A model generated the notes under the pieces. That model searched no databases. It saw only the letters and a program-made list of their open reading frames with translations, and was not told where the DNA came from. Made by a program: the position numbers and the translations under genes. Positions 292-63,458 of a stretch of DNA of 64,000 bases are shown here, piece by piece; positions within the stretch are counted from its first letter, which is position 1; each line of letters opens with the position of its first letter. Source of the stretch: Rhodosorus marinus CCMP1338 (Eukaryota > Plantae > Rhodophyta); contig JAMWBK010000003.1 of the NCBI GenBank assembly GCA_029953675.1, positions 1,736,001-1,800,000 on the forward strand. The letters are read 5' to 3'.

Positions 292-1231
292 CCTCACACG
301 ACTCAAAAAAAAAAAAGCCCAGAAAAATTAGACAAAAGCAAACAGATCCAAAGATCCAAAAACTCCCAAAACTCAACAAAAATCAACGCGTCCTTCTTCA
401 CACACACACCAACAACACTTCCTCTTTAACATCAACTCCTCCTTCCCCCCCTACTCCAACCCCCAAACCCAACTTCGCTTTACGCACACAACTGAATAAG
501 AGTTTCACGTCATCTCAGCACGGATAGCTGGCATACGACAAAAAGAGTACTCCGTCGAAAAAGACGTTTTCCATCGGTCTGGATGTTTTGTCTATTTCTT
601 TGAAGAAAAAACTATTCAATCAACATTTACGGGAAGGGACTGATTTTTCGAGGGAATGGTTCACACGGTGGTCAGTTGACGATAGCTCATGAAGGCTGAA
701 TCAATGTGGAAGCTGCTGGCTACTATGACTGGATCTGACTGCCATCGAACTGAATAATGGCATCCTTTTAGCTCTTCAATAGTTGTGGATTTCTCTCCAT
801 ATGAAGTGGTGATGAACAGGCACCTGGCAAAAACAGGGAGGATGTGTGGGAGGTGTTGAGGGGATGTGGGTTGTTCCAAAGAGTTCGACAGGTTTCACCC
901 CTGGCAGGAGAGAAACCAGGACCGGCAGAGCACCCGCCACCTCCCCCACCCCCGCTTTCAGTAAACAAGACCAAGACAGAAAGCACTCAAAGTGCTAGTA
1001 GAGTCTCGCGCCTCCGACGGGAGCGATGCTGGCACCATATCAAAAAAGGATCGCATCATCAAGTAGGCAGGATTCCAAATTCTTAGTGGAGCTCGCCGGA
1101 AGAGTTCATGTGTGGTAAAAGGTTTCTCAGAATTGGCATAGGGCGGTACTTTTGCAGCAAACATCCTCTAGTCAAAAACCAGAAACATCATTTAAATTGA
1201 AATAGACCGTCTGTCATCTTCATAACTTCTC

Positions 1232-1545
1232 TGTGACGTCTCCACCTTCTAGCAATGTCCGGCTATGCAAAATTATGCTCGGGCTGTGCCAAAATCTCTT
1301 CAGGTGCAACACCCTTTTGATCTTTATAGTTATTGCACATCCCGCTGGAGCAAGAGTATAAGTACGATGGGCAAACTCGATATTCCTAGGTTAGCTGGAG
1401 AGAGGAGAAGGAAAAATAAGAAGAAAATAGGAGGAAAAAAGGATAGAATTGGAATATATTACCTAATTAGGGAGTAATTAGGGGGGATAAAACCGGAAAT
1501 ATGGAGTAATTGAGGAATAACCAGCTGGCAGTTTGAGACGTAAAA
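1232..1545 (+). repeat. 5' LTR (314 bp)
   Basis: Starts TGTGACGTCTC and ends GAGACGTAAAA, a degenerate match to the expected GAGACGTCACA. Contains TATAAGTA...GGTTAGCTGGAGAG, similar to the other LTRs in the window, and is followed after 2 nt by the PBS. Confidence 0.75.
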
Positions 1546-1547
1546 TC

Positions 1548-1559
1548 TGGTCTCATCGC
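1548..1559 (+). promoter_or_regulatory. Primer-binding site TGGTCTCATCGC (copy 1)
   Basis: TGG-starting 12-mer 2 nt after the LTR end. An identical 12-mer follows the other LTR 3' end at 2030-2041. Confidence 0.8.
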
Positions 1560-1577
1560 ATGATTGCGATTGAGGAA

Positions 1578-1927
1578 CCGACCCGGAGCCAGAGAACCTG
1601 AAGGACAACGTAAATGAGCCCAGAACCAGAAAACCAGTAAACCTGAGACCCAGGAACCAGAACTAGGATGGCCGCATTGATTAAGATCCAGGCCCCGCAG
1701 CCACGAGCATACGATGGCAGACGGGCCAACTTAAAATACGTTCTGAGGTTGTTCAAGAATGTACTAATGGTAAGCGCGTCCCGTTTGCCATCGTATGCTC
1801 GTGGCTGCGGGGCCTGGATCTTAATCAATGCTGCCATCCTAGTTCTGGTTCCTGGGTCTCGGGTTTACTGGTTTTCTGGTTCTGGGCTCATTTACGTTGT
1901 CCTTCAGGTTCTCTCGCTCCGGGTCGG
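1578..1927. repeat. Inverted repeat of the gag leader and gag start: 148-bp arms (1578-1725 / 1780-1927) with a 54-bp spacer
   Basis: The arms are near-perfect reverse complements with a few substitutions. ORFs on both strands begin MAALIKIQAPQPRAYDG. Confidence 0.95.
1726..1837 (-). pseudogene. gag: Gypsy gag N-terminal fragment
   Basis: MAALIKIQAPQPRAYDGKRDALTISTFLNNLRTYFKL fits the P..YDG.RD....FL..L..YF pattern of retrotransposon gag N-termini. It is truncated by the fold-back. Confidence 0.7.
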
Positions 1928-1948
1928 AGAATCTTTTTCTCTATCTTG

Positions 1949-2041
1949 GATAGAGAAAAAGATAAAAACATAAAAGGGAATTTGAACTATTTTGGATCAC
2001 CAACACACGTTAATACGGAACGTGTCAATTGGTCTCATCGC
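1949..2041 (+). repeat. LTR 3' fragment (ends ACGTGTCA at 2027) plus PBS copy 2 (2030-2041)
   Basis: Aligns with the last ~80 bp of the 4037-4290 LTR (gaaaaagataaaa...ttttggatcac...acgtgtca). Confidence 0.85.
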
Positions 2042-2739
2042 GATAAGTTCTGAGCAATTTATCGACCATTGATTCAGGTACGCAAATACGATGACGTCGA
2101 TAGAGGACGTTATTCCTTTTGACAAAACCCTGCTCCGCATATTCTGCAGGTCGCTGATAGATCGCCGCAAACTCTGGATCGCGTAGGCACGCCTGCGGCC
2201 AGTCCACATCGGTCGTAATCGACGATACAGCCAGTTGCTGGATGGCGTGTCTGCTTAGCGCATCCGCAATGTTGTCACTGCCTTTTCTGTATTCGATAGA
2301 AACCTGGAAGGGCATCAGTCTGTTGATATATCTTGCCTGCCTCTTCGTGAGCTCCTTCTGCCACCGGATAGTTTTCTCTTTCAGCGGGGAGGAGTTGTGA
2401 CGTCCTGACATGACATCTGGCAAAACAAATTGGTGACGAAGAGGTAGGCAAGATATATCAACAAACTGATGCCCTTCCAGTTTTCTATCGAATACAGAAA
2501 AGGCAGTGACAACATTGCGGATGCGCTAAGCAGACACGCCATCCAGCAACTGGCTGTATCGTCGATTACGACCGATGTGGACTGGCCGCAGGCGTACCTA
2601 CGCGATCCAGAGTTTGCGGCGATCTATCAGCGACCTGCAGAAATGGAGCAGGGTTTTGTCAAAAGGAATAACGTCCTCTATCGACGTCATCGTATTTGCG
2701 TACCTGAATCAATGGTCGATAAATTGCTCAGAACTTATC
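2042..2739. repeat. Inverted repeat of pol: ~305-bp arms (2042-2348 / 2436-2739) with an 87-bp spacer containing a PPT and LTR start
   Basis: Minus ORF 2025-2423 and plus ORF 2469-3869 share MPFQ.SIEYRKGSDNIADALSRH...MVDKLLRTY. I counted four substitutions and 3 bp of indel between the arms. Confidence 0.95.
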
Positions 2740-3930
2740 ACGACGAGCCAACGGGAGGTCATTTCGGCACTACCAAAACTCGGAACCTGATCAAGCGCAA
2801 ATACTATTGGGCGACCTTGAGGCAGGACGTTGAGAAACGTCTGAGCACCTGTGCAATGTGTCAAAAGCAGAAGCCGCTCCGATATTCAACCGGCACCCTG
2901 CAACCTTTACCTATTCCCGACGGAAAGCTTCAATCCATATCAATGGACTTCATCGTCAGCCTAACTAAAACGGAGGACGGGTTTGACTCGATCCTAGTCA
3001 TCGTCGATCGGTTCACCAAGTATGCCCGTTTCCTACCGACAACGACAACGGCGACGGCGCAACAAACCGCGAAGCTGTTCTTACGTCATTGGGTTAGGTT
3101 CGCGGGTATACCTAGAGACATCATTTCTGACCGAGACCCAAAATTCACGGGCTTTTTCTGGAGGGAATTGTTGAAGATGCTGCGAGTAAGGCAAAACCTG
3201 AGTACAGCCTACCATCCACAATCAGACGGACAAACAGAAAGAACGAACCAGACCTTGGAAACGTACCTGCGATGTAATTCAACAACCACAACTTGGGCGG
3301 ACGACCTTCCTACGGCAGAGCTGGCCTACAACTGCCAAGTTTCAGAGTCTACGAAGTTCTCCCCCTTCGAGTTGCTTTCCGGAAAGAACCCGACTTTGCC
3401 TCCCGATCTTACAGTCCCCGATGCTAACGGCCCTTCATTGTCATTACCTGAAGCCGCAACCATTATGTTACAACGACAACAAGACCAACGAGACCTAGCC
3501 CGCGCCAACCTACGATATGCCCAAGAACGCCAACGCTTCTACTATGATCGAGGCAAAAGAGACCTCCACTTTGAACCAGCGAATATGTGCTCTTGTCACA
3601 CGGAATCTTCAACTCCCAGATTCAAAAGTTTTTCGGCCCAGATATATGTTGGACCGATTAAAATTTTACGCAAAATTGGTAACGTTGCGTATAAGCTGGA
3701 GCTCACTGGAGATTCTCAGATGCATGATGTTTTTCATGTATCACTGTTACGAAAGTTCAATGGACCTGAACCTGAAGGCTCGCCCGTAGTTCCTGTACTA
3801 CAACCAGCAGTACCACAACGAGAGTTGCGAAGTCAGTATTGGGATATCGACGAGACGAAAAGAACCTAAATGAATACTTCGTCTACTTTGAAGGCGAGAC
3901 AACGGATGATTTGAGATGGCTACCCTACCA
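2418..3930 (+). pseudogene. pol: Gypsy pol 3' part: RNase H end, zinc-binding HHCC, integrase core, GP(Y/F)-like region and frameshifted chromodomain-like tail
   Basis: Motifs: YRKGSDNIADALSR; H..PTGGHFG...C.MCQ; SMDFIVSL; SDRDPKFT; STAYHPQSDGQTERTN; GPIKI...AYKLEL..HDVFHVSLL; EYFVYFEGE...RWLP after the frameshift. There is an in-frame TAG at 2445-2447. Confidence 0.9.
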
Positions 3931-4036
3931 TCTACTACCGCAGAACCGGACCAAGAAACAAATCCGGTATTATACGAATCTCCACAAGGCAGCTTCTTCT
4001 GCCACCGGATAGTTCTTTCCTTTAGTGGGGAGGAGT

Positions 4037-4290
4037 TGTTGCGTCCTGCCCGAACAAGTCAGCTGTCAGGAGTGTAGCCCAAAACAAGGCTAATAATAGA
4101 TAAGTCTAGATCTAATAATAGTACTCTAGCAAACCCAAGACATGAACCGGAAGCCTATAAATACGGAAGTTACGACCTTCCGTCTTAGGATTAGAGCTAG
4201 AGGAGGAGTATCCAAAATAGAAAAAGATAAAACAAAAAGGGAATTTAAGTTATTTTGGATCACCTACACGCGTTGACGGAGAACGTGTCA
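4037..4290 (+). repeat. 3' LTR (254 bp, TG...CA) preceded by a PPT at 4024-4035
   Basis: AGTGGGGAGGAG PPT, then TGTTGCG...TATAAAT...ACGTGTCA. Confidence 0.9.
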
Positions 4291-4420
4291 TGTCATAACT
4301 CAATATCAAGAACACGAAAAATCATGCAGTTCATATCATGACAGGCTAAGGGGGCTTATGAAGACCTAGATGTAAACGCAGTCCCGCACGTAACTCGAAG
4401 GCTGTTAAGGCTAGTCGAGA

Positions 4421-5820: not shown

Positions 5821-6283
5821 ATGGGGAGGATGGGGAGAGGTCGTGGGATCATTTTATTGGTTTTGGTTTTCGTATTTTTGTTGGGTGTTGCTTATGGAGG
5901 GGGTCAGCATAGAAGCAAAATAGGAGACTGTTCGCGAGGGGTGAAGGCAAGTAGTCGTCGGCAGGGTTTATCTGGAAAATACGTAAGTTCTGCGTTCAGA
6001 TGTCTTCTGCTGAGGTTGTGGGTCGGACTTGTTTTACTAACGTGTCGCTTCCTTGCTTTGGAATTTTGTGTTATAGGGTAAGACAACCCAGAGAGGGCCT
6101 TCATACCGAGCGCAGAGGCCTGCTGGAAAGATGAAAATGGAGACCAAGTACCACAAAATGCCGGGAACTAACTTGAAGCGGCAAGTACGGACCCGAAGAG
6201 CGACTAGAGGAGTTGGATCACGAATCTGGACCGCTTTTAATAATTTCAGGGAGAGGAGAGCTAGAACTTCTTATGTTGCATAA
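5821..6283 (+). CDS. Possible small two-exon protein with an N-terminal hydrophobic signal
   Basis: MGRMGRGRGIILLVLVFVFLLGVAYGG..., a GTAAGT donor near 5992 and a TTATAG acceptor near 6076, with a G-rich upstream block. No family recognised. Confidence 0.3.
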
Positions 6284-6435: not shown

Positions 6436-8161
6436 TTATCCTCGTGCTTCTTTCAATATATCAGTTAGAAGTTTCTTCTTCTGAATTCGAAACTGTACCG
6501 CAATAGACTTTTTCTTCAGTCCTTCGTCCTCCTCCAAAGTGGTCGGCATGTTCTGTATCATGTGAAAACAACCAGACGCTTAAGTCGATCCTGTTCTTTG
6601 CCTTGAGTCTGTTGAGGAACCATCCTACCTCAAGTTCGCTGAGGCAGACTTGCTCTGCAAAGGGCTTGATTCCGTCCTCGCCAAACAGTTTAGACACTGA
6701 GTTCTGAACGGACTTGTCGAAGTTGAGTGTGCTCTTAAGCAAGACAACTGGCCCGTACTCTTTCTCCTGATCGTTGAGGGTTGTCGAATCGATGTCAAGC
6801 GAATCTAGAACGCTCTGCAGTGTTTCTCCCACCACATAGATATCATGAGGATTATCCTCCTCAACGAATCCATAGTACTGAAGCAGCTGATCGTTGCTTC
6901 GGTCTCCGTAGCTGATGAAAACCTGTTGAGGAAGCGCCGGACTGAGTCGTGCAGAACAAGCGAGAGATCACCCAGCCCATAGCCTTCTCCTACCTGTTCG
7001 CCCTTCTTATAGGGACCCGTCTTAAGCACAAAGCTACTAAAGAAGTACTCATAGGATAGGTCCGATTCGGCTCGGCTGCTGTGGTTGCAAAAGTCAACGA
7101 TCGGGCAAAGTATGTATCGTTTCCATTCCTCTCCTCCGATTGCTTTCTGCACTCGTGGATAAATAAGGTCGTAGCTTAGAAGCGCGATGACTGCTAAGCT
7201 CAATCCGTTCAAGACCTGTCAATCAAGGAAAGCAAAGTTTTACTTCTCAGCTTGCGTACGAGTGGGCTCTCTCAGCGGTGCTCTCGGACGTAGCATTCTG
7301 GGTGCGAGCTTTGATGATTCATCCGAACCAGACTGAAGGCTAGCGGGTGGAAGAATTCCTAAAATTCCCCTTGTCTTGTTCGTTACCTGCTCGGAGTCTG
7401 CCAAATGCAGGGTTAGTGCTGCTACAGAGAGCGCACCGGCGAAAGCAATGGTTTTTAATCTTTCTGCGAACGGCGTAGCCTCAGCTTCGCCGCTGAAAGC
7501 TCGCGAGCGAACGCACTCCAAGGCCCATACAAACTCATCGAATTCTACATTTCGCCCGTCTTTCAGATTCTCCACCAGCAGTCGATGCAGGCGCTTCCAT
7601 TCCTGCTGTTGGTTCACGACCTGTTTTCCATTGCGATTCAGGTCTCTGATTAATACTGAAGTGTAGCCTGAACTGCTGCTTTACCTGCTTCTGGATGGGT
7701 ATGTACTGTGTCTCCTGGAGTTCCTCTGCTGTCCAATGGAAAGGGGTCGAGAAGCTTTTCGGCAGGGCATTGACGTATCCTGAGAGATTCGGCTTCTTGT
7801 CCGTCTGCTTCTGATAGACAAGTCGCAGCGCCAGCCGAACCCACCATCGCTGAGATTTCCAATACGAGCTAGTAACAAAAGCAGGAATTGGGTTCGTTTC
7901 AGGTATTGAGTTCGACTCCAGAACCATCTCCTTCGGAACCTTGACGATAGCACTCGATGCATCAAAGTCCTGTTCCGCGATCATTCCTCTAACATTGCCG
8001 GCAAAAGTATGCAAGTTCATGACGGTCCATTGAATTCCCCCGTCTCTTGCCCAGGACAGAGGTGATGAAGAGGCAGCAGACATAACGCAGCCTTTTTTTC
8101 TCCTCAAGGCCGCAACAGACTTGCTGGGGAGCCCCACTCCAAGAAAGGCACACGTGGCCAT
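6436..8161 (-). CDS. SET-domain (Rubisco LSMT-like) lysine methyltransferase, multi-exon, with a transit-peptide-like N-terminus
   Basis: Motifs: RGMIA, KVP..M, YVNALPKSFSTPFHW, WALECVRSRAF, PIVDFCNH, VFISYG.RSNDQLLQYYGF, and C-terminal TTLEED...RIQKKKLL. GT-AG introns join the ORF pieces. Confidence 0.92.
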
Positions 8162-9311: not shown

Positions 9312-10871
9312 TCACATTTCTATGAGCTCTACAACCTCTGTTACGAGTGCATACTTTGGATCGATTCTTTTCAAGTCTGGAAAGTCCATTAGAGACAGCG
9401 CCCCGAGCCCGAAGAAGGTGTGGAATACGTCGGGAATGTCCCCCGGTCTATCTGCAATCCCTCCGTCTGGACTCTATTAGAACAGTACGAGACAGAGGTG
9501 ACAGGAATTATTGGACGTCAGCGGCAGCTGCGGTTGGACCGTCCTCGACTTCTTTTGTGAATCAAATTTGATCGAGGCTGCTCACCTGGCATTGGAGAAT
9601 AAACTCCGTGAGCTTTTCTCTATCTATCCAATCGATTTTGCCAAGCATCGCCATGGAGGACAACACCCACCACGAATAACATACCTGGGTAGCCAAGGAC
9701 AAGATTCAGTAAATAAAGTGTCAATCTTTTGTAAAGAGGGAAAGTACCTACATCTTCTTTCTTGTCGGGTCTCCCGTTGAACCCACCACATGGAAGCTGC
9801 CGCTCACTAAGCCACCATCCAAGCAGGTCCACGTCAATTCTATCCAAGGACTTGGTCAGCGCCAGAGCACCAACGCAGCAGAAAACTGCAGGCAAAAAGA
9901 TGTTTTAAAGCAAACGCTTAGATACAAACAACACAAAAAGCAGTTTTTGCTTCCGAGGTGTCCCGGCTCACTCTGTCCAGCATGAGACTCAGCTCCTGGT
10001 ATACATCCAAAACCGCCGTCAAAGTTTCGGCACCGGAGGACATAGTCAATAGCTTTATCAACGTCAACATCCTCCAGTCTATTCATGATCTTTAGACAAA
10101 GCAAGGCTCCATAGGAGAACCGGGTGTCGACTTCACCCCACTGGTCACCAGAGAACGATCCATCTTCGTTCTGCATGGATTTTATATCTGTCCAGGAAAC
10201 GCTTTAGTTCGCACTAGTTAGAGAAGTAGTGGATGTCTTGGTAGGTCATGTATGTATCCTCGAGAATCACTCGGCTCAGCCAAAACTATGACAGTTTTTG
10301 GCTTCTCTTACATTCGACGACTTTCTCAATATCAAGCCTATCCAATTCATTGTAGATCGCTAGGATCTGAACAGCGCTGAGCGTTGAAAGCAGTTGTGGA
10401 TCTAGCTGCTCATTTGCGCCAAAGCCACCTGAACGTTGTAGTGTTGTGAGTGACCAACACATACTTGCTCTCTCAAGAGCAGGTTGGATCAAAATTTCCT
10501 TCTCTAGAGGATGTCATATGGACAATTTTGCATACCAGAATCCTTGTCATACGTTTTGAACACCCATTCAACGATTTCTTCTTTGGGAAGGTCATCGAGG
10601 CAGTCCATTATTTGCAATGAAGCGAGGGCCCAGTATACCCCGCTGATCTTTCGATGCTCGAGCATGTACATTTCAAAAGATTCTTTCTTCTGTTCGCAGC
10701 ACCCAAAAACAAAATTCGCAATAGAAATCTCAGGCTCGCAGCTCGTGTAACGGACAAGCTTCTTCCACGATTGATTACCTCATAAAGCTGTTTGATGTGC
10801 TCTCGATGCAGAGCAGCCGTAAGCGGACCGACCGCTTTGCTCTCCTCTTCATGATCTCCTTCGGTACTCAT
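9312..10871 (-). CDS. RABGGTB: Rab geranylgeranyltransferase (GGTase-II) beta subunit, multi-exon
   Basis: Motifs: [93 protein letters not shown]...IDP.YAL. Confidence 0.95.
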
Positions 10872-28779: not shown

Positions 28780-29290
28780 CCTCTTCACTCGCTCCACAAG
28801 GGAGATCTTTTAGTAACGCGTTCACTGCTACTGGCTTCCAAGATCTTCCGACCTCGATACATCGGGCCTTTTGAATTCTACGCAAAATCAACAAAGTCGA
28901 ATACCAGTTCAAGTTCAGTTAAGACTTCCAATTCACCAAACCTTTCCCGTATCACGTCGGCAGAAATTTATGGGGTCGGAACCGGAGATCCATCGGCTAC
29001 ATATACCCGATTCACTTCTGATGACCCAAACTCATCAGATTTTTGTGAAGTCGGTATTATTGAAATGCCTGAGTCCAGGTAACTTGACGAATACTTCGTC
29101 TACACGGAAGGCGAGACGATGACCTGCGATGGCTACCTTATCATCAGCTGACACAAAACGGGAATACCAGGCAGCAAATACAGAATCACATCACGGAATA
29201 CCGTATAAGAATGTTAACTTCACAAAGCGGTTGCTTCTTCGATAGGGCAGTATTTCCTTTCGGTGGGAGGAAATTGACAGGTCAGCTCAA
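28780..29290 (+). mobile_element. Degenerate 3' end of a gypsy element related to 1232-4290 (integrase tail, chromodomain-like region, PPT, LTR start at 29275)
   Basis: gaatacttcgtctac..gaaggcgagac...gatggctacc matches 3872-3926. The pre-PPT/PPT segment ttcctttcggtgggaggaaat precedes TGACAG. Confidence 0.8.
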
Positions 29291-29995
29291 GAGCATTGGG
29301 CGTGCATAAGTTGCACAGCCGGAGGGCAAAAATAGCACAGCCGGAGGGCTCACTCTAAAGGCTCATGGGGAAGTTTCTTACTCGACAGGGATCTGTTATA
29401 AAGCGCGTATTTTCCGGATTTCGGGAATCGGATTTAACGTATTTAATCTGGTTCAATTCAGAAACGTGGATTTTATTGAAAACCTGCCGGTTTAATTCAG
29501 AATCGGAGGTTTTCATCATCATCGAATACCCTGAGGAAGCGGGAAACAAGAGGCTGATGAAGCGCGTCCAAGAGTAAAGCAGGGTTTGAATGGCGGCAGA
29601 GAGTCAAAAACAGCTCCGCCAGGCAGTGAGGAGGCCGTCAAGCGCCCCCTCGGTCGCTACGAAATAGAGACGAAGCCAACGAGAACCCACACTAGCATAT
29701 AAGCCAAAGCACTCGATGGTGAAAGGAACAAACAAAAGGCTTGGGGCTAGGGACCGATTCCAGCCTAACGGCTTTTTCTCGTGCGCCAAGCCTCTTCCTG
29801 AGGCTGCCCCCGGCTTGGGCCAAGCGTTCCTCAACCCCCATCCCATTCACACAGTATCACTGAACTTCGGCTTGCCAGAGGGGTCTTCGGCGGTATTGGA
29901 GGTGGTGATCGGGGCTGCAGACGATGATGATGCTCCACAGATATTGAGCCGCCTCGGAGCTGAAGAACAGAACCCCATCACTGCCTAAGTTTCTA

Positions 29996-30399
29996 TGACA
30001 ACTGTCCTTTGAATCCGGACAGATAATGGCAATCTATTTCAAAATTAAGAAGATTTCAAAGCTAATCATCCAAAATATAGAGCATAGTTGCTAAATATTT
30101 TATGCAAAATCTTTATTGGGGGGTAAGCCTCAGTGACTGGATTCCCCAAAACCGGTTTTAATTGACTAAACTGCCTCAGTCAATTAAAAATATGGTTTTT
30201 TAAAGCTTAGAAAGCACTAAAAGCACTAAAAATCCGTACTCGGCTAGCCTATAAATACCGTAGTTATGGCATCTCGTCCCTGGGTTAGCTCGAGGAGAGT
30301 CAAGAAGTAGAAAGAAAGAATATAGATTTAGAATATTAACCTAAATTGGGAAATATCATATTGAGTTGAAAATTGAATTGAAGAAGAATTAAGCCGTCA
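29996..30399 (+). mobile_element. Solo-LTR-like element (404 bp, TGAC...GTCA)
   Basis: gcctataaatac.g.agtta...gttagctcgaggagag matches the TATA region of the 4037-4290 LTR. It has an internal 12-bp stem (30156-30167 / 30178-30189). No TSD seen. Confidence 0.65.
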
Positions 30400-30821
30400 A
30401 CTCAGTTTCCCAAAATTTGATGACGACTAGTGGGGTCAAAGAAAGAATAAATTAATTGACTGAATCAATCAATCAATCAATATTAATTCTCTCATCGATT
30501 CCGTTGTGAGATTGGCTTTGTTGGCTAGTGTTTCTTTTGAGAGAAATGCAGCACTCGGAGAGAAGGTTCGTATTTCTTCTCGTCTCGATGCTTCTGGCAA
30601 GCTGTTGGGTGCTTCCGGGGTTCTTTGGATGGAGAGTTTCTCTCTCTCTCCCCCTAGTGGATCTGGAGCAAGATATGCATGGGATGGGAGGGGTACATAA
30701 GGATGGAAGGGTGGGGGGAAGGTGGAGGGGGAGTGGGTGATTTGTGATTAGATTTTTCTAGTGTGGTATGCGGTTTGGAGATTTTGGCTCGGTTTGAGGA
30801 TTTGTTGACCTGGCGGTTGGA

Positions 30822-39250: not shown

Positions 39251-39943
39251 CAACCTTCCGCTGATGTGCCGATTGTTGATCTACTTGTCCACAAAGAAGT
39301 TCCAGACAAAAACTCCCGCCCTGGTCAAGACGAAGAGAAAATAGAATGCAACTATCTATCTTCTGGACGAAAAGAAGTCTTACAACCTTCAGATTGCTGG
39401 TGTGGGTCTATAGATCAACAGTGTGGGACCCCACTTCGATCCCAACGTACCCAACAAAAAAATTGTTGGATGATGATGAGCTTGTTCCCAAAGCTGTTTA
39501 TGTGGCGTTTCCACAGAAAAAAAAAAAAAAAACAGGAATCTGTCTCGTCTCTTTCGTGAGCAAGATGACCGTGGCAAGGACGTGCGGAATGGAAACCAGG
39601 TTTCGTCAGTGCCTTCTGACAACAACAACAACCATCTTTCTTCTCTCAACCGTAGCCAAGAAGGATGGGATGATAAGGAGTTTTCTATAGGTAGGGAAGC
39701 AGTTTCTTGCCGATCCACGAAAAAGAGAAATCTGTCTTGTCTTGTTTTTGAGGGTGGAAGGGACGCAAAGTAGATGTGACAGGAGAGGACATCCGAAGTT
39801 ATACAAGCGTCGGTGAACCTGCTCAAACAAAACAGCTTAGGAGCTTATCTGCAACGGCCCACCCCCGACGCCATTCTCGGCATATGAGGTGATGGGGGGA
39901 AAACAGAAAAACGGGTCGGAATCCCCAGACTGACTAAAAATCA

Positions 39944-40098
39944 CCAACGACGAAAAAAAAAATACGGAAGCCGTGAAAGGAAGAGAATCACTTAGACAAG
40001 ATATACTTTAGAAGGAGCAGTACTTTAGAAGGAGCAGTATATCTTGTCTAAGTGATTCTCTTCCTTTCACGGCTTCCGTATTTTTTTTTCGTCGTTGG
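39944..40098. repeat. Hairpin: 64/63-bp arms (39944-40007 / 40036-40098), with the centre formed by a 17-bp tandem duplication
   Basis: The arms are reverse complements apart from A10 vs T9. TACTTTAGAAGGAGCAG occurs twice (40004-40020, 40021-40037). Confidence 0.95.
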
Positions 40099-40900
40099 AG
40101 ATTTTAATCCATCCCGAACATGCTCGAGGATCAGGTGCCTCTTCCGAAGGAGTGTCCACCTCCTTCCACACAGACCTCAAAACCTTTGAATTTAAAGGGA
40201 AACAGGGGGTTATTCATATATCCAAATATTTCCAAGCACGTGTCTTTGAAAAGGTTTATCGGACTCTTAAAGTACTATATGATCTTCGTACAATTTTAGT
40301 ACAGTACCTGATTTGCCTTCCAGTTTTACATTAGATTAGATTTCGGTATATTAGTATATACTGTATATTGATCTTAAATGTCACTCACAGAATTAGGAGT
40401 TGATGGCAATGGGGGGATTTTGGCTGGTTGTTTTGGTGAGAAGCAGTCAGAGCGCGAAAGTGATGAAGGTAATGTCTCTAGTGGCTGGCAAATAGACGAA
40501 ATTATCAATCTCTAGTTTTAACATCGTCTCGTTCTTCCCCCGTACCCGATAGCATCGATTGCTAGCCCGGGGATCAGCAGGTTTCGGACCGAGACTGGAG
40601 GAAGAAGATGAAAACGGTTGAACAGGCTTAGGCAGCCTTGCGTTGATTCTGAAATCAGAAAGAAAATTTGCTAGCTTAAAGGAGACGAACAACGAGAAAG
40701 AAGATATTATATTTTGCGAGCCTCGGCGATTTCCGAGTGGGGAGATGATGGCACGAGGACGTTGTTGGTACGGCTTTTGGATGGCGTAGGGAGGCCGCAC
40801 TGGTGGAGGTGTTTTTTTTGAAGTTCTGAGGGTTTGTTTCAGAAAAAAACAGAAGACGCTGCGACGGAGGGTACTCCTCCAGACTGTATAGGCCGCTGTA

Positions 40901-48414: not shown

Positions 48415-48747
48415 ATGAATGTGTTTATTGATGGGATCCCGGGGGTTGAATTCTCGTCGGTAGGAACAAGGAGCTCCGCGGGGTGGATGGACTGCCGTCA
48501 TGCCCAGTGTCGGATTTTCCCCAATTTTTTTTTTTCGAGCTCCCCCGCGGAACTCCATGTTCCTAACGTCATGAACCCCGATGAACGCCAGCGTCACTCT
48601 GTCTTCCCTTACCATCTGTCCCCAACGTTGGAAGAAAATTACTCTGCCTATTACGCTCTCTATTGAGAGGGGTTGATCCTGCTGAATATGCTGATGGTCA
48701 ACATCCAGGCGCCCTGTCCACCAGAGGTAAACTGATTCCGAAAATCG
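48415..48747 (+). mobile_element. Degenerate non-LTR reverse transcriptase core fragment
   Basis: With one frameshift it reads VFID...FSSV...W...RQRHSVFPYHL...LE-LLCLLRSLLRGVDPAEYADG (compare RQG..LSPYLF...YADD). A roughly 70%-identical copy by eye lies at ~52260-52380. Confidence 0.55.
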
Positions 48748-49422
48748 GGATCAACCCCTCTCAACAGAGAGCGTAATAGGCGGAGTAATTTTCTTCCAAC
48801 GTTGGGGACAGATGGTAAGCTTTATTGGGCAGCCGCCTAATGCGGCGTAACACTGAGTCTATCACTAACTAGAGAATTACTGACGATAACCCCGCTACCG
48901 GGGTCGCATGCTACGTTCTAAAGAAAAAACAGGGACCACTGGATTGTCCAGCTGGTCCACACGCAGAGCGCCTAGTGCGACTTCTGCGTTCCCCTGCCAA
49001 AGGTGCCTGTTTAGCTGAGCGCGTACGTCGCTCAACTCCTCGCACCTCCTACATCGTTGCGAGGAGTTGAGCGACGTACGCGCTCAGCTAAACAGGCACC
49101 TTTGGCAGGGGAACGCAGAAGTCGCACTAGGCGCTCTGCGTGTGGACCAGCTGGACAATCCAGTGGTCCCTGTTTTTTCTTTAGAACGTAGCATGCGACC
49201 CCGGTAGCGGGGTTATCGTAAGTAATTCTCTATTTAGTGATAGACTCAGTGTTACGCCGCATTAGGCGGCTGCCCAATAAAGCTTACCATCTGTCCCCAA
49301 CGTTGGAAGAAAATTACTCCGCCTATTACGCTCTCTATTGAGAGGGGTTGATCCTGCTGAATATGCTGATGGTCAACATCCAGGCGCCCTGTCCACCTGA
49401 GGTAAACTGATTCCGAAAATCG
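48608..49422. repeat. Nested palindrome A-B-A'-C-loop-C'-A-B: 297-bp arms (48748-49044 / 49058-49354), 13-nt loop, flanked by 140-bp direct repeats (48608-48747 / 49283-49422)
   Basis: Read directly from the sequence. About 3 mismatches between the arms and 2 between the direct repeats. Confidence 0.97.
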
Positions 49423-52129: not shown

Positions 52130-52390
52130 ATGGCACAACTCCTAAGCGGACTCTCACACTACTACCCTCAGATCAACAAATGGATCTCTTGTGCGGGCAG
52201 AGTTACCCCCTTCTTTACTCTACCCCTATCCATCATACCGTTCTTCGACCCGGCCCGGTATGCCGGAGTCGTTCTGCCTTTGCTCATCGTCTATCCCTTA
52301 AGCAGAATGTAACTACTCTGCCTACTACGCTATATAGAGGAGGGGGGTTGATCCCGCAAAACAACCAAACGGTCAACAGCTCCAACCTTC
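52130..52390 (+). mobile_element. Degenerate non-LTR RT fragment homologous to 48580-48700
   Basis: tactctgccta.tacgct.t.ta..gag..ggggttgatcc.gc and ggtcaaca are shared, and the mostly transition-type similarity extends ~40 bp further upstream. Confidence 0.6.
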
Positions 52391-59917: not shown

Positions 59918-61177
59918 TTGGAAGAATGGTGCTTGCAGCGAGGAGTCAGCATAGGCAAAGTGCGCGTAAGCCACTTTCCTATCACTGGGAGGGGAATGGC
60001 TGCAACTGGAACCATACAACCTGGGGATGTGCTTCTGTCAGTACCCCTTTCTGCGATCTTCTCACATCATGAGCTATGCGAAGGTAGTGGACCTGTCGAG
60101 CTTGCACCGGCGTATGCGTTGTTAGTGGCGATTCTGCTCGAGTCCCGCAAAGGTCGAAAATCAGCTTGGTATGAGTATCTGAGGCTCCTTCCCGAACAGG
60201 AACACATTCTAGCAACTTGGAAGATGCAAGATATCGCACTACTTCAAGACGCGAAGCTGTTTGAGAGCGCCATGGCGGGGAAGCGCAAGTGGAAGGAAGT
60301 GCTCTCTACATGTCAGCAGGCAGTTCCCAACTACTCGAAAGACTTCACCGTAGATGACATAGCTTGGGCTTGGTCTATTGCAGCTTCTAGGAGTGCCTAC
60401 ATGGAAAAGAAGGCTTGGAAAGAGTTGGAACACAGTCGAAAGCCCTCGAGGAATAGCCACTCCGAGCGTGGTCCGGGATGTACGTATGATGGCGCCGGAG
60501 TTGGCGTTCTGATTCCCCTACTAGATATGTTCAACCATAGTTGTCGACCCGTGTCGACAGCTGGGTATAATCCCGAAAGCGATTCGTACGATTTGATTGC
60601 TGATGCGGCATACGCTGAAGGGGAACAGGTCTTTATTCATTACGGACCGCTTTCTAACAGAGAGCTGGTAGAGCACTGGGGGTTCACGTTGGAGGATAAC
60701 CCTCATGATTCCATTATCCTCTCGATGTCCGAGATTACGCGAGTTGAAAGCACCACCCTGACTCAACCAGAATTGATAAGCGCGGCCCGGATCCTTGGTA
60801 TTGAGAATCCGCTCTGTGCGGATGCCTCATACACTGTTGGGATTGCCCAGGCTAAGGCGTCATTCTGGGATTCAGTACCGTGGCAGCTGACCACTAGCTT
60901 GCAGCTTTCAGCTCTGGAGGCTCGAATTTGTGATTGTGAACATGTCGATCTCGTCGAGACGCTCGCGAATGGAGTAGTGGCATGTGCATGCATAGAGAAG
61001 CTGTGCATATCCCAGCTTAGAGATGCTCTTTTGGACAGGCATACTCGCCTCCAGGCGTCAATCACTAGGGCCAGCACTGCCGCAGCTTCCGATCATGTCA
61101 AAACCGCGGCAACAAGCTACTTAATCAGTCAGGACTGCATCGTGCAGAGCATTCTGCGCACGTTGACTGGGATTTGA
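59918..61177 (+). CDS. SET-domain (SETD3/SETD4/LSMT-like) methyltransferase; one long exon, 5' end unresolved
   Basis: TGRGMAAT, LLSVP, WYEYLRLLP, WAWSIAASRS, LIPLLDMFNHS, EQVFIHYGPLSNRELVEHWGFTLEDNPHD. Confidence 0.9.
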   Translation: MEEWCLQRGVSIGKVRVSHFPITGRGMAATGTIQPGDVLLSVPLSAIFSHHELCEGSGPVELAPAYALLVAILLESRKGRKSAWYEYLRLLPEQEHILATWKMQDIALLQDAKLFESAMAGKRKWKEVLSTCQQAVPNYSKDFTVDDIAWAWSIAASRSAYMEKKAWKELEHSRKPSRNSHSERGPGCTYDGAGVGVLIPLLDMFNHSCRPVSTAGYNPESDSYDLIADAAYAEGEQVFIHYGPLSNRELVEHWGFTLEDNPHDSIILSMSEITRVESTTLTQPELISAARILGIENPLCADASYTVGIAQAKASFWDSVPWQLTTSLQLSALEARICDCEHVDLVETLANGVVACACIEKLCISQLRDALLDRHTRLQASITRASTAAASDHVKTAATSYLISQDCIVQSILRTLTGI

Positions 61178-62282
61178 ACAAGCTCATTGTTAAAGGTGCT
61201 TACCCAAGTACGTATCTGATCAACCACGAACAAATTCAGTTGTCGGGTGATCGAGCGCTGATCTCACGCCAGATGCTTAGCTGCCTGATCAATCTGTGGG
61301 CGGCGGTCCGTTTTCTCACCACAGTAAGAACACCTAATATCCCCGGTAAAGGTGAATAACAGGCTCTGCAAAAAGCAATCGCACATCGGAATATTCAGTC
61401 TTCAAGTGGAAAGCAATCCTCCCTCACGCGCCTACAATCAACACCTAGATTGTGTGAACGGAACCGTGCTCGAATCATCATGGGTTGGTGCTCACGGAGA
61501 CCAGTCAGGGCGCTTTTTTTTTACAACTCGGCCGCTGCACCTCCGTTCGTTGATTTTATGTAAAATCGGATGGGTAGGATACCCTACATCGTTTACTCAT
61601 ATACGGCAACCCTAGCAGGAAGGAAAAGAATCCAGGAGGAAGAAAGAGCCTGCGGGAGAGGGGAGGTAGGTTGGGATGAGGGACTCTAAAACGAAACCGG
61701 CGTTTAGAACGCCACATGCCCAGAACCACAAAAAAAAGAAGCGCAGGTAGAAGAGAAAGACGGGAGCAAGTTGTTGCGATCTCTAGAAACCAGTCGCGAA
61801 GCCAAACCAGGACAGACTTTTCTCCGAATCCGGAGGCCTCGATGTGAACATCCCGTAGTCTCAATCAAAATAACTCCTAAATGATTGAAATTTTACGTCA
61901 ATCAAAAATTCAGTCATTTAAAGATCTCTTGGCTTTGTGGACTCTAGTGACAGGCTGTCAAATGGAGAAAGGGCACAGGGTATAGGATTGGAGACACATA
62001 ACGGACTTTAGGGGGACTGAAGGGGGGGGGAGCTGAGGGTGGGGAAGGTGGGGAAAAGGTGGGGGGGGAGGGGCGGTGGCAAAGGAGTAAGGAGTGAGCG
62101 GGGGGACTAGAGCTTTTCTTTTATTATTTGTTGGCATAAAGATTTAGTTTGTGGTTTTATTGGGGTATATTGAGAAGCTGGGCAGGTAGAAAAGGGACGT
62201 GAGAGGTTTTTTGTTTGTTTTGGGGGCCGTGCTGTGGGAGAGGGGAGAGGAAGAGAGCGGAGGTTTGGGAGAAAGTATTAGC

Positions 62283-63458
62283 ATGGTGAGGGTTAGGGTT
62301 GAGGAAGTTCCGTCTTCGGAATGTGGTAGTTTTTTCGTGGAAGGAGGAGGTTTTGAGTTGGCTGGTTTGGAGGTTGTGAAGGAGATAACTGGAGCGTTTG
62401 GTATTGAGGAAGGGGATTTTTTCTTGACGAAAGATGGGAGGCTGGTTGACGGTGGAGAATTTTTTGAGGATGGGTGTGTTCTTCGGCTTTGTGTCCGAGC
62501 CCGGGGAGGGAAGGGCGGATTTGGTAGTATGCTTCGAGGGCAGGGTGGGGCGAAGAAAACAACAAACTTCACCGCTTGTAGAGACTTGTCTGGTCGGAGG
62601 TTGAGGGCGTCTGACAATCAGGAGCGCTTGGCGACATGGAGGGAAGACCAGGATAAAAAAGCTGGCGAGAAGCGGAAGGCAGACGATGGTGAAGCGTCGA
62701 CTTCGCGTTTGGCGGAGAAAACACCTGAATTCGATGCGGAAGGATTCCACGAGAAGCTTACGGCTGTTGGGGGAAGAATTTCTGAGGCACTGGAAAAGGG
62801 TTTTCAGGAAGACGCAAAGAAATCTCAGTCTCAAAAAGTTGCCAAGGCCACTGAAGAACTGAAGACTAACAAGCTCCTGAAGAGACGACGAACGTACATG
62901 GATGTCGACGACGATAGCGGCAGCGACGAAGAGGACGAGGATGTGAAGCTTGCACCAAAGCCGCAAGAGCTCGATGGAGGCTCTTCGAAACAAACTCCGT
63001 TACGGTTCGAAGCGCCTTCGAGGACTTCTCGAGAGCCTTCACCCATTGTCTCGTCTTTGGCGCAGTCCATTTCTACTGAGCCTGTGTCTGATTGTGGTGA
63101 CTCGTCATATGCCCATTCGGACCCAATCACCGAGCCCATTGCAGAAACAGAAGCGGTGGCGCAGCAGGCTACGGCTAGAGACATCGCGCAGGAAACAACT
63201 GCGCGAATCGTGAACGCTTCAAGTGTGGACGAAGGATCGGAGCCCAAGATCGATCTCAAGAGTTACGACTCGGCTTCTGCTCTAGAGAGCCTGGGCTTGG
63301 AATCGCTCAAACATGAGCTGTCCAGTCGAGGTCTGAAGTGCGGCGGAACTCTGCAGGAGAGAGCGAGCCGCCTATTCTTGTGCAAGGAAGCAGACCCTTC
63401 TTCACTCAATCCAAAGCACAGAGCACGTCCAAAGGCCAAGCCCCACGGCAGAGGCTAG
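62283..63458 (+). CDS. SDE2: SDE2 homologue (ubiquitin-fold N-terminus, C-terminal SAP-like motif)
   Basis: LCVRARGG|KGGFGSMLR, TNFTACRDLSGRRLR, and LESLGLESLKHELSSRGLKCGGTLQERASRLF. Confidence 0.95.
   Translation: MVRVRVEEVPSSECGSFFVEGGGFELAGLEVVKEITGAFGIEEGDFFLTKDGRLVDGGEFFEDGCVLRLCVRARGGKGGFGSMLRGQGGAKKTTNFTACRDLSGRRLRASDNQERLATWREDQDKKAGEKRKADDGEASTSRLAEKTPEFDAEGFHEKLTAVGGRISEALEKGFQEDAKKSQSQKVAKATEELKTNKLLKRRRTYMDVDDDSGSDEEDEDVKLAPKPQELDGGSSKQTPLRFEAPSRTSREPSPIVSSLAQSISTEPVSDCGDSSYAHSDPITEPIAETEAVAQQATARDIAQETTARIVNASSVDEGSEPKIDLKSYDSASALESLGLESLKHELSSRGLKCGGTLQERASRLFLCKEADPSSLNPKHRARPKAKPHGRG

What the first reader, a model, noticed from the sequence alone, without database searches (positions are those of the whole stretch)
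1928..2750. Gypsy element scrambled at its replication landmarks (LTR end, PBS, pre-PPT region, LTR start)
Seen: the order here is LTR 3' fragment, PBS (2030-2041), ANTISENSE pol (2042-2348), sense pre-PPT/PPT, the first ~20 bp of an LTR (from 2396), then SENSE pol. The PBS junction lands where sense pol reads ACGACGAG-CCA (2740-2750), a 9/12 match to the reverse complement of the PBS (GCGATGAGACCA). The next junction uses CAGAAG(G/A)AGCT microhomology with the pre-PPT region (compare 3990-4004). Established: during LTR reverse transcription, plus-strand strong-stop DNA ends in a PBS copy and must strand-transfer. Inference: the strong-stop DNA mis-transferred onto a cryptic anti-PBS within pol, followed by further template switches, and the aberrant cDNA was then integrated. 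The result is a ~305-bp-stem hairpin of RNaseH/integrase sequence.
Basis: partly seen in the sequence, partly recalled or inferred. Interest (0 to 1): 0.8.

Follow-up and report, generated by a model that had tools for sequence, protein, structure and literature searches.

The report
Scrambled dead retrotransposon with two hairpins
A broken Ty3/gypsy retrotransposon copy in the red alga Rhodosorus marinus is folded back on itself three times, with one junction exactly at the end of its primer-binding site; it is most likely a fossil of faulty reverse transcription, but it is one dead copy with no shown function.

Summary
In window 1928-2750 the order is R-U5 fragment, exact 12-nt PBS, 307 nt of antisense pol, pol tail/PPT/first 12 nt of U3, then sense pol. 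The stem is about 305 bp at 98% identity. The PBS junction sits on a 9/12 cryptic anti-PBS (position-specific p about 0.005), and the product keeps the PBS letter at all three informative positions.

The whole element (1232-4290) holds a second 148-bp hairpin (1578-1927), a 15-nt mini-palindrome (1931-1963) and a second PBS (1548). Its pieces come from three diverged LTR types. It has no canonical target duplication and lacks most of gag plus all of PR and RT. The claimed microhomology at the second junction is not significant, and "~20 bp" of LTR is 12 bp.

Best reading (about 0.45): DNA synthesis that switched strand and template on retroelement replication intermediates. The junctions fall at the PBS end and at U3 +12, the known plus-strand initiation pause in HIV-1.

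Main rival (about 0.3): post-integration fold-back template switching. Two similar hairpin loci with no retroelement match in any test run lie in the same 64 kb.

No other copy or independent assembly could be reached. Interest is moderate.

The parts
1220..1227 (.). Left copy of a flanking 8-nt direct repeat, TCATAACT. It lies 4 nt before the 5' LTR. The wider match is TGTCATCTTCATAACT at 1212-1227.
   Evidence: The same 8-mer lies at 4293-4300, 2 nt after the 3' LTR. My own estimate of chance for an 8-mer within +/-10 nt of both ends is about 0.006. This is not a canonical 5-bp TSD.
1232..1547 (+). LTR-a, the 5' LTR of a diverged subtype. It starts TGTGACGTC and has TATAAGTA at 1347-1354. 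It ends ..GTAAAATC, without a terminal CA.
   Evidence: Colinear but weak similarity to LTR-c (offsets 152-211 vs 148-207; score 27 vs shuffle mean 19.1, sd 2.4, max 31). Its R region resembles the LTR of the relic at about 30250-30340.
1548..1559 (+). PBS copy 1, TGGTCTCATCGC. It forms a stem-loop (1551-1575) with the leader.
   Evidence: one of two exact copies. (fold).
1560..1725 (+). Leader and putative gag start (ATG at 1668), sense. The hairpin-1 left arm is 1578-1725.
1726..1927 (-). Loop (1726-1779) plus the hairpin-1 right arm (1780-1927). On the minus strand this reads as contiguous leader and gag: MAALIKIQAPQPRAYDGKRDALTISTFLNNLRTYFKL.
   Evidence: Arms are 148 nt with 4 mismatches. 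The minus-strand ORF 1553-1837 carries the gag-like motif through the loop. Fold of 1548-1970, which also includes the PBS stem-loop and the mini-palindrome: -353 kcal/mol, z = -37.
1931..1963 (.). Perfect mini-palindrome ATCTTTTTCTCTATC-TTG-GATAGAGAAAAAGAT. The right arm is the first 15 nt of the b-type LTR fragment. 1928-1930 (AGA) is unassigned.
1949..2029 (+). b-type R-U5 fragment ending ..CGTGTCA (2027), plus a 2-nt spacer AT.
   Evidence: 81.5% identical to 4216-4290. D1.
2030..2041 (+). PBS copy 2, exact. The junction to antisense pol is at 2041|2042.
2042..2348 (-). Antisense pol arm (end of RNase H to start of integrase), the reverse complement of 2436-2739. It keeps CAG where the sense arm has TAG.
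2350..2407 (+). b-type piece: last 7 pol codons, stop TAG (2369-2371), PPT GGGGAGGAG (2386-2394) and the first 12 nt of U3 (2396-2407). Position 2349 is unassigned.
   Evidence: 86% identical to 3991-4048. The pol C-terminus is fixed by the P0002 alignment, which ends at 4009.
2408..4012 (+). Sense pol: RNase H end, integrase (HHCC, DDE core, SH3-like) and chromodomain-like tail. Decayed: TAG at 2445-2447, frame disruption with indels (probably paired frameshifts) at about 3590-3650, and a frameshift at about 3820-3830. The hairpin-2 right arm is 2436-2747. The cryptic anti-PBS is 2740-2750.
   Evidence: Pfam PF17921, PF00665, PF24626. Translations and homologue alignments.
4027..4035 (+). PPT of the 3' end, GGGGAGGAG.
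4037..4290 (+). LTR-c, the 3' LTR (TG..CA, 254 nt, TATAAATA at 4156-4163).
4293..4300 (.). Right copy of the flanking repeat TCATAACT.

Best explanation
[quoted passage not shown] On the + strand it is a zig-zag:
- LTR-a, PBS, leader and gag start (sense)
- gag to leader (antisense)
- 15 nt of R (antisense)
- R-U5-PBS of a second LTR type (sense)
- 307 nt of pol (antisense)
- pol tail, PPT and U3 +1..+12 of that second type (sense)
- pol to LTR-c of a third type (sense)

I think the scramble arose at the cDNA level, before or during fixation in the chromosome. Nascent DNA ends produced by reverse transcriptase stopped at natural stop or pause points. These were the end of the PBS copy, 12 nt after the PPT, and possibly the 5' end of the RNA. 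The ends then snapped back or annealed to other retroelement RNA or cDNA strands.

The clearest step is a DNA ending in the PBS that primed on a cryptic anti-PBS in sense pol and copied it backwards. That made the antisense arm.

The mosaic was then fixed without normal integrase processing. The ends carry extra nucleotides, there is no 5-bp duplication, and there may be an 8-bp flanking repeat.

Shown: the anatomy, the junction positions, the PBS microhomology with retention of the PBS letters, the three LTR types, and the decay.
Inferred: the polymerase, the order of events, and the route of fixation.

Today the copy cannot transpose. If it is transcribed from LTR-a, the RNA would carry 148-bp and about 305-bp double-stranded stems against the gag leader and the RNase H/integrase region.
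For: - PBS junction: it lies at 2041|2042, exactly at the PBS 3' end. Complementarity is 9/12 plus one gap, and 0.46% of positions do as well. All three informative positions are the PBS type, as expected for a primer terminus.
- U3 +12: the b-type PPT piece ends at U3 +12 (+12 to +14). This matches the pause of PPT-primed plus-strand synthesis after 12 nt in HIV-1 (PMC3185654).
- Foreign pieces: the two b-type pieces are exactly the two ends of a genomic-RNA-like unit, R-U5-PBS and tail-PPT-U3 start. They come from a copy 14-19% diverged from the flanking 3' end.
- Mini-palindrome: it is centred 53-60 nt downstream of the TATA box homologue, so a fold-back at the RNA 5' end is possible.
- Hairpin-1 arm: it stops 2 nt beyond the PBS stem-loop.
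- Near-symmetric fold-backs: there are three, with offsets of 54, 3 and 28+58 nt. Random deletions in nested copies cannot explain this.
- Outer ends: they are LTR termini with 4 and 2 extra nt, flanked by TCATAACT.
- Precedents: RT template switching makes complex LTR elements (PMC1950507). Ty1 replication intermediates are captured at chromosome breaks (PMC11372161).
Against: - Three LTR types, each needed on both strands, are more than two co-packaged RNAs can supply.
- The 5' and 3' LTRs differ, which normal reverse transcription never produces.
- Only one of six junctions has significant microhomology.
- The R start is not known, so the 'RNA 5' end' coincidence is untested.
- The +12 match was noticed after the fact and rests on HIV-1.
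- Two other short-spacer inverted duplications lie in the same 64 kb and matched nothing retroelement-related in the tests run. One of them is a direct-inverted-direct zig-zag. This shows a DNA-level process, or an assembly property, that makes the same kind of structure.
- No other copy, read set or second assembly could be examined.
Confidence: 0.45

Rival explanations
1. Post-integration DNA-level rearrangement. Replication or repair template switching (fold-back, ODIRA/MMBIR-like) acted on a pre-existing cluster of nested or recombined a-, b- and c-type fragments. Gene conversion then kept the arms alike. The PBS junction is merely a microhomology-guided landing.
For: - The same window holds a 297-nt, 99% palindrome with a 13-nt spacer that runs into a direct repeat (48608-49422). 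This is a direct-inverted-direct structure.
- It also holds a perfect palindrome of at least 54 nt at 39954-40089 (palindromic span 39937-40105). Neither locus matched a retroelement protein or domain.
- Replication template switching at short inverted repeats is a documented source of inverted copies (PMC11790251).
- Genomic copies offer both strands of any number of subtypes.
- Five of six junctions lack significant microhomology, as in end joining.
Against: - It explains the inverted arms but not the sense-oriented a/b/c mosaic, which needs extra nested insertions and precise deletions.
- A junction exactly at the PBS 3' end with all PBS letters kept, and another at U3 +12, would be coincidences. 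My rough estimate is under 1% each.
- The primer's 3'-terminal mismatch (C opposite A at 2740) would be removed by a proofreading polymerase.
- Three fold-backs within 1.2 kb is far above the background of two loci in about 60 kb.
Confidence: 0.3
2. One reading: one plus-strand strong-stop DNA of one element mis-transferred to the cryptic anti-PBS, made two more switches, and the cDNA was integrated normally.
For: PBS-end junction with 9/12 complementarity. The piece spanning the PPT/U3 border comes next.
Against: - U3 is missing upstream of the PBS, and a 15-nt snap-back and an antisense leader are there instead.
- Donor pieces are 14-19% diverged from the element's own 3' end.
- The LTRs differ.
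- There is no 5-bp TSD.
- The second junction lacks microhomology.
- It does not cover 1548-1963.
Confidence: 0.08
3. A pre-existing non-autonomous b-type element with the structure R-U5-PBS, antisense pol insert, pol tail, PPT, U3. Its RNA paired with pol RNA of the autonomous element. Minus-strand synthesis on the latter jumped once (pol 2408 to U3 +12) and ran to the 5' end of the b RNA. That single jump would give junctions J6 to J3.
For: 1949-2407 has exactly the layout of a retroelement transcript from its 5' end to 12 nt into U3. One jump replaces four.
Against: - The insert is 98% identical to the neighbouring pol, while the b-type ends are 81-86% identical. This would need later gene conversion.
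- No such element was found. The only annotated protein from the insert is a singleton cluster.
- It leaves 1548-1947 unexplained.
Confidence: 0.08
4. Assembly or polishing artefact of the Nanopore/NextDenovo/Pilon assembly.
For: The assembly is ONT-based and polished with short reads, which map ambiguously in inverted repeats (PMC10250338). Several hairpins lie in one window. There is no second assembly.
Against: - The structure is mid-contig in a 3.35-Mb contig with unique flanks on both sides.
- The arms differ by substitutions and an in-frame 3-nt indel, not homopolymer errors.
- The b-type inserts are not copies of anything nearby.
- From my own knowledge, not tested here: read-level fold-back chimeras give whole-read palindromes, not 15-300-nt arms with foreign inserts.
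Confidence: 0.06

Closest known systems
Ty3/gypsy chromoviruses (Metaviridae; Tf1/sushi-like integrases with an SH3-like domain and chromodomain tail)
   Same: Integrase zinc-binding, DDE core and Tf2-1 SH3 domains. The pol tail is 81% identical to a MMETSP red-algal transcript over 64 residues and ends at the same residue. It has a TG..CA 3' LTR, a PPT, and a TGG.. PBS 2 nt after U5.
   Different: Most of gag and all of PR and RT are absent. The LTRs are unequal. There is no 5-bp TSD. The best protein relatives are only 67% identical, so the family itself is undescribed.
[quoted passage not shown]
   Same: A daughter element fused from more than one parent RNA before insertion. It is a mosaic of family members.
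   Different: As I read that abstract, the fusion of two parent elements is colinear (two elements sharing an LTR). Here the segments alternate in orientation and form hairpins, and the junctions sit at the PBS end and U3 +12.
Self-primed (snap-back) strong-stop DNA and hairpin-primed second-strand cDNA synthesis by retroviral RT (my own knowledge: HIV-1 TAR-dependent self-priming; classical cDNA cloning)
   Same: A perfect 15-nt palindrome with a 3-nt loop sits at the start of an R-U5-PBS fragment. A DNA ending in the PBS copy is then used as a primer.
   Different: Only 15 nt of the return arm remain. The RNA 5' end is not mapped. These are in vitro or in virion products, not known as fixed genomic copies.
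Capture of Ty1 cDNA replication intermediates at chromosomal double-strand breaks (PMC11372161; Moore & Haber 1996 and Teng et al. 1996 from my own knowledge)
   Same: Non-integrase fixation of incomplete cDNAs. There are extra cDNA-only nucleotides at LTR ends, an LTR-end bias, and no canonical TSD.
   Different: As far as I recall (not checked in the papers read), those yeast inserts are mostly simple fragments. A seven-segment zig-zag bounded by two LTRs has not been described there.
Replication template switching: ODIRA and DUP-TRP/INV-DUP (PMC11790251)
   Same: Inverted copies next to their source, short spacers, and a zig-zag order. An example with no retroelement match lies at 48608-49422 in this window.
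   Different: Those events copy local sequence only. Here two inserted pieces come from a different element copy and end at retroelement replication landmarks.
Transposon- or virus-derived inverted repeats that feed RNAi (Mu killer in maize, my own knowledge; rearranged endogenous pararetroviruses in tomato, PMC9868043)
   Same: A rearranged, partial, inverted duplication of a mobile element that could give long hairpin RNA against its own family.
   Different: Transcription, small RNAs and the RNAi machinery of R. marinus were not examined. This is a possible consequence, not a finding.

Membership tests
Ty3/gypsy (chromovirus) LTR retrotransposon | Integrase with HHCC zinc finger, DDE core and C-terminal SH3-like/GPY-F domain, downstream of RNase H | tested here: met
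   PF17921 (2.6e-20), PF00665 (5.2e-9) and PF24626 (4e-13) on 2469-3866. Homologues align from the RQARW motif at the RNase H end.
Ty3/gypsy (chromovirus) LTR retrotransposon | Chromodomain at the integrase C-terminus | tested here: inconclusive
   Pfam finds nothing in the 46-aa tail. Most homologues carry PF00385. The tail aligns at 81% with P0002 to its last residue.
Ty3/gypsy (chromovirus) LTR retrotransposon | gag, protease and reverse transcriptase present | tested here: not met
   tblastn with 120 homologues, several of them with PF00078, hits only 2031-2522(-), 2307-4009(+) and a relic near 29100. Only about 19-37 gag-like codons remain. This is a deleted copy, not a different family.
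Ty3/gypsy (chromovirus) LTR retrotransposon | Two near-identical LTRs with TG..CA ends, and a 4-6-bp target-site duplication | tested here: not met
   LTR-c is TG..CA. LTR-a starts with TG but ends AATC, and is only weakly and colinearly similar to LTR-c. The 5-mers at the ends are TTCTC and TGTCA. Only a displaced 8-mer, TCATAACT, is shared.
Ty3/gypsy (chromovirus) LTR retrotransposon | PBS complementary to a host tRNA 3' end next to U5; PPT next to U3 | tested here: inconclusive
   TGGTCTCATCGC lies 2 nt after U5, twice. PPT GGGGAGGAG occurs twice. There is no tRNA gene in the window to match. No Tf1-like self-primer complement is present in the LTRs (best 7-8 of 12).
Product of plus-strand strong-stop DNA mis-transfer | Junction at the 3' end of the PBS copy, on a partly complementary acceptor, with the primer sequence retained | tested here: met
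   2041|2042; 9/12 plus one gap; frequency 0.0046; PBS type at 2033, 2037 and 2041.
Product of plus-strand strong-stop DNA mis-transfer | A complete U3-R-U5 upstream of that PBS, from the same element as the acceptor | tested here: not met
   Only 1949-2027 (R-U5) is present, preceded by a 15-nt inverted copy. It is 81.5% identical to LTR-c, while the pol arms are 98% identical.
Self-primed minus-strand strong-stop DNA | Palindrome centred on the first nucleotide of R, with the return arm running through U5 into a PBS copy | tested here: inconclusive
   The palindrome 1931-1963 and R-U5-PBS are present. The centre lies 53-60 nt after the TATA homologue. The transcription start is not known and cannot be tested with these tools.
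Replication-based fold-back (ODIRA / DUP-TRP/INV-DUP) | Inverted copy of adjacent local sequence, often as the middle of a triplication, with junctions at short inverted repeats | tested here: inconclusive
   Both long arms are local copies. There is no third direct copy. The b-type inserts are not local. The control locus 48608-49422 does fit this pattern.
Hairpin-RNA (RNAi trigger) locus of the Mu killer type | Transcribed long inverted repeat of a transposon that yields small RNAs | not testable with these tools
   The inverted repeats and an upstream LTR with a TATA box exist. No expression or small-RNA data were available.

The most novel reading that the evidence does not exclude
The locus is a genomic fossil that records, junction by junction, failed reverse transcription in a red-algal chromovirus. 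A snap-back strong-stop DNA ending in the PBS primed on a cryptic anti-PBS. A PPT-primed plus strand was abandoned at +12. The pieces were joined with other intermediates and fixed at a chromosome break. The resulting double hairpin now serves as a heritable dsRNA source against that family.
Probability: 0.12. Interest if true: 0.65.

Novelty: new variant of a known kind. Interest (0 to 1): 0.38.

Why it matters
If the cDNA-level reading holds, this would be a rare natural record of where reverse transcriptase stalls and mis-primes in vivo. The stall points would be the PBS end and +12 after the PPT, in a lineage (red algae) whose retroelements are almost unstudied. It would also be an example of how a self-targeting hairpin locus can arise in one step.

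If the DNA-level reading holds, the wider point is different. Short-spacer fold-back duplications would be unusually common in the R. marinus genome (three loci in 64 kb), which deserves a genome-wide census.

Either way the copy itself is dead, and no function is shown.

Tried and rejected
1. Antisense coding of the pre-PPT piece. On the minus strand, 2350-2407 reads ..IRWQKEL and joins the RQARY motif, and 5 of 8 b/c differences fall on third positions of that frame. Rejected: the piece is the sense C-terminus of pol (..HKAASSATG*, aligned to the last residue of P0002). The position bias is not significant (about 0.09 before multiple testing). Similarity to pol 2400-2435 is at chance level.

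2. Microhomology at the other junctions. J5 gives p = 0.3-0.5, J6 gives 0.1-0.27 and J2 gives 0.04. None is convincing.

3. Nested insertions plus random deletions. Rejected, because three near-symmetric fold-backs cannot arise that way.

4. Autointegration. Rejected, because no junction is at an LTR terminus (CA/TG).

5. Tf1-like self-priming. There is no complement of the PBS in any LTR.

6. tRNA match for the PBS. There is no tRNA gene in the window.

7. Other copies or an independent assembly.
- The integrase search gave nothing above 67% identity.
- Exact-protein look-ups found only the source contig or nothing.
- The 128-aa ORF is a singleton cluster.
- A metagenome scan for U5-NN-PBS gave 20 chance hits with no homology.

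8. Pfam on the gag fragment and the chromodomain tail found nothing.

9. LTR-a as non-LTR DNA. Rejected on its colinear similarity to LTR-c and to the LTR of the relic at about 30250-30340.

10. I built no full-length family consensus. No other copies were reachable, and the junctions could be mapped piece by piece on the element's own sense copies.
Full report
**Source and context**

The window is JAMWBK010000003.1, about 1,736,001-1,800,000, of assembly GCA_029953675.1. This is the nuclear genome of the red alga Rhodosorus marinus CCMP1338. It was assembled from Oxford Nanopore reads with NextDenovo and polished three times with Pilon (PMC10250338).

The element lies between a divergently oriented RPN7 gene, which starts about 940 bp to the left, and a small called gene at window 5821-6283 on the right. 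It is the only sizeable retroelement in the 64 kb. Self-BLAST and tblastn with 120 homologues find nothing else, apart from a heavily decayed relic at about 28.8-30.4 kb.

**Check of the observation**

The described order is there.
- 1949-2027 is the R-U5 end of an LTR, 81.5% identical to 4216-4290, and ends ..CGTGTCA.
- After 2 nt comes TGGTCTCATCGC (2030-2041), identical to a second copy at 1548-1559.
- 2042-2348 is the reverse complement of 2436-2739, with four substitutions and one 3-nt in-frame indel. Read on the minus strand it encodes the RQARY...ADALSR...YHDE stretch between RNase H and integrase.
- 2350-2407 is 86% identical to 3991-4048.
- From 2408, sense pol runs to a stop at 4010-4012.

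P0002, a MMETSP transcript product, aligns at 81% to 3821-4009 and ends at the same residue. The 'pre-PPT' stretch is therefore the last seven pol codons, the stop and a 14-nt spacer before the PPT GGGGAGGAG.

The stem folds at -640.9 kcal/mol, against -226 for shuffles.

Three details need correction.
- The LTR start after the PPT is 12 nt long, not about 20.
- The LTR fragment begins at 1949, and 1931-1945 is its perfect inverted copy.
- The second junction (2348|G|2350) has no microhomology beyond chance.

**The PBS junction**

Sense pol 2740-2750 reads ACGACGAG-CCA, against the anti-PBS GCGATGAGACCA (9/12 with one gap). Only 0.46% of positions in the window score as well. The site is not unique, however: about 20 end positions in 2408-4034 score as well, and one scores better.

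At the three positions where the PBS and the pol complement differ (2033, 2037, 2041), the locus carries the PBS letter. That is expected if a DNA 3' end terminating exactly in the PBS copy annealed to sense pol and was extended. The terminal C would face A at 2740. A polymerase without proofreading tolerates that mismatch.

The scramble spans 1232-4290. The segments are, in order:
- 1232-1547 is an LTR of a diverged type (LTR-a). It has the same start, TGTGACGTC, and a TATA box and a downstream block colinear with LTR-c (local score 27 against 19.1 +/- 2.4; offsets 152-211 vs 148-207). It is closer to the LTR of the relic at about 30250-30340.
- Next comes the PBS (1548), the leader and a putative gag start.
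- At 1725 the sequence turns. 1780-1927 is the inverse of 1578-1725 with 4 mismatches.
- The 54-nt loop is contiguous with the minus-strand reading (..YDGKRDALTISTFLNNLRTYFKL), not with the plus-strand one.
- The right arm stops 2 nt beyond a natural PBS stem-loop at 1551-1575.
- After AGA comes the mini-palindrome 1931-1963.

In total there are three fold-backs, two PBS copies and seven segments of alternating polarity.

The hairpin arms are 97-98% alike. By contrast, the R-U5-PBS and tail-PPT-U3 pieces (b-type) are 14-19% diverged from the element's own 3' end (c-type), and LTR-a is far more diverged. At least three source copies contributed.

The copy lacks most of gag and all of PR and RT. 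Sense pol has a stop at 2445-2447, frame disruption with indels (probably paired frameshifts) at about 3590-3650, and a frameshift near 3820-3830.

The five bases outside the two LTR ends do not match. An 8-mer, TCATAACT, lies 4 nt before LTR-a and 2 nt after LTR-c.

**Mechanism**

Three near-symmetric fold-backs rule out nested insertions trimmed by random deletions. Junctions away from LTR termini rule out autointegration. What remains is DNA synthesis that switched strand and template. The open question is whether this happened on retroelement replication intermediates or on chromosomal DNA.

- One junction is exactly at the PBS 3' end, the natural terminus of strong-stop-type DNA.
- The b-type PPT piece ends at U3 +12 (to +14). 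This is where HIV-1 RT pauses after extending the PPT primer by 12 nt before removing it (PMC3185654). This match is a lead found after the fact, not a test.
- The mini-palindrome sits where a transcript start could be, 53-60 nt after the TATA homologue. This is untested.
- The foreign pieces are the two ends of a transcript-like unit.
- The outer ends are LTR termini with a few extra nucleotides and no 5-bp duplication, as in captured Ty1 cDNA intermediates (PMC11372161).
- Template switching that fuses parent elements before insertion has been proposed in Triticeae (PMC1950507).

For the second reading:
- The same window contains 48608-49422. This is a 140-nt unit, then a 297-nt inverted arm, a 13-nt loop, and the other arm running into a second direct copy of the unit.
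- It also contains a perfect palindrome with arms of at least 54 nt at 39954-40089 (palindromic span 39937-40105).
- Neither locus matched a retroelement protein or domain.

Fold-back duplication is therefore a general feature of this genome or assembly. Replication template switching is a documented cause of such structures (PMC11790251). That process, however, explains only the inverted arms. It does not explain the sense-oriented three-type mosaic or the two landmark junctions.

**Consequence**

The copy cannot transpose. A transcript from LTR-a would hold two long double-stranded stems. This is the arrangement that triggers RNAi in other organisms (PMC9868043). Nothing here shows transcription or small RNAs.

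The genome annotation calls a 128-aa protein on the minus strand (2025-2411). It is just the antisense arm read in the pol frame, and it is a singleton cluster.

**Limits**

No other family copy, raw read or second assembly could be reached.
- The best integrase relatives are 67% identical.
- Exact-protein look-ups returned only the source contig.
- The metagenome scan gave chance hits only.

The family's intact structure, its transcript start and its primer tRNA remain unknown.

**Verdict**

This is a real, more complex and partly mis-described structure. The full story is unresolved, and an origin that does not involve reverse transcriptase is a serious rival. It is a new variant of known kinds of rearranged retroelement, of moderate interest.

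Noticed in passing
window 48608-49422: Zig-zag repeat with no retroelement match. A 140-nt unit (48608-47747 in order: 48608-48747) is followed by a 297-nt inverted arm (48748-49044), a 13-nt loop, and the other arm (49058-49354). That arm runs into a second direct copy of the unit (49283-49422, 98.6%). The structure is direct-inverted-direct, as in replication template switching. Part of the unit is 75% similar to 52311-52378.
   Followed up: partly
window 39937-40105: Perfect palindrome with arms of at least 54 nt (39954-40007 / 40036-40089). Its centre holds a tandem 17-nt duplication (TTTAGAAGGAGCAGTAC x2). It lies in DNA with no Pfam-recognisable gene nearby. Only sub-threshold Rfam hairpin hits were found.
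   Followed up: partly
window 28798-30400 (+): Second, much more decayed chromovirus relic. It holds integrase C-terminal and chromodomain-tail remnants (63% identical to P0002), a pol stop, a PPT-like GGTGGGAGGAAA (29264-29275) and a long LTR with TATAAATA at about 30251. The R region of that LTR resembles LTR-a. This shows that several diverged subfamilies exist in the genome.
   Followed up: partly
window 2025-2411 (-): The public annotation calls a 128-aa protein here (P0243, in NCBI nr and UniRef). It is the antisense pol arm read in the pol frame, fused to the reverse complements of the PPT piece and the PBS. It is a singleton at 90% clustering.
   Followed up: yes
window 1220-1227 and 4293-4300: The shared 8-mer TCATAACT lies 4 nt outside the 5' LTR and 2 nt outside the 3' LTR. 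It may be a non-canonical target duplication with filler nucleotides. The TG after the 3' LTR could be an unprocessed U5-PBS spacer.
   Followed up: partly
window 1551-1575: A natural stem-loop pairs the PBS (TCTCATCGC) with the leader (GCGATTGAGG). The right arm of the first hairpin stops 2 nt beyond it, as if synthesis paused at this structure.
   Followed up: partly
window 6436-8161 (-), 9620-10176 (-), 59918-63458 (+): Host genes with introns: a possible SET-type methyltransferase-like gene (assigned by eye, no Pfam match), a prenyltransferase beta-like gene (assigned by eye, not tested), a SET-domain gene and SDE2. Their products are about 87% identical to 'Rhodosorus marinus' MMETSP transcripts, so the MMETSP strains are quite distant from CCMP1338.
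   Followed up: partly
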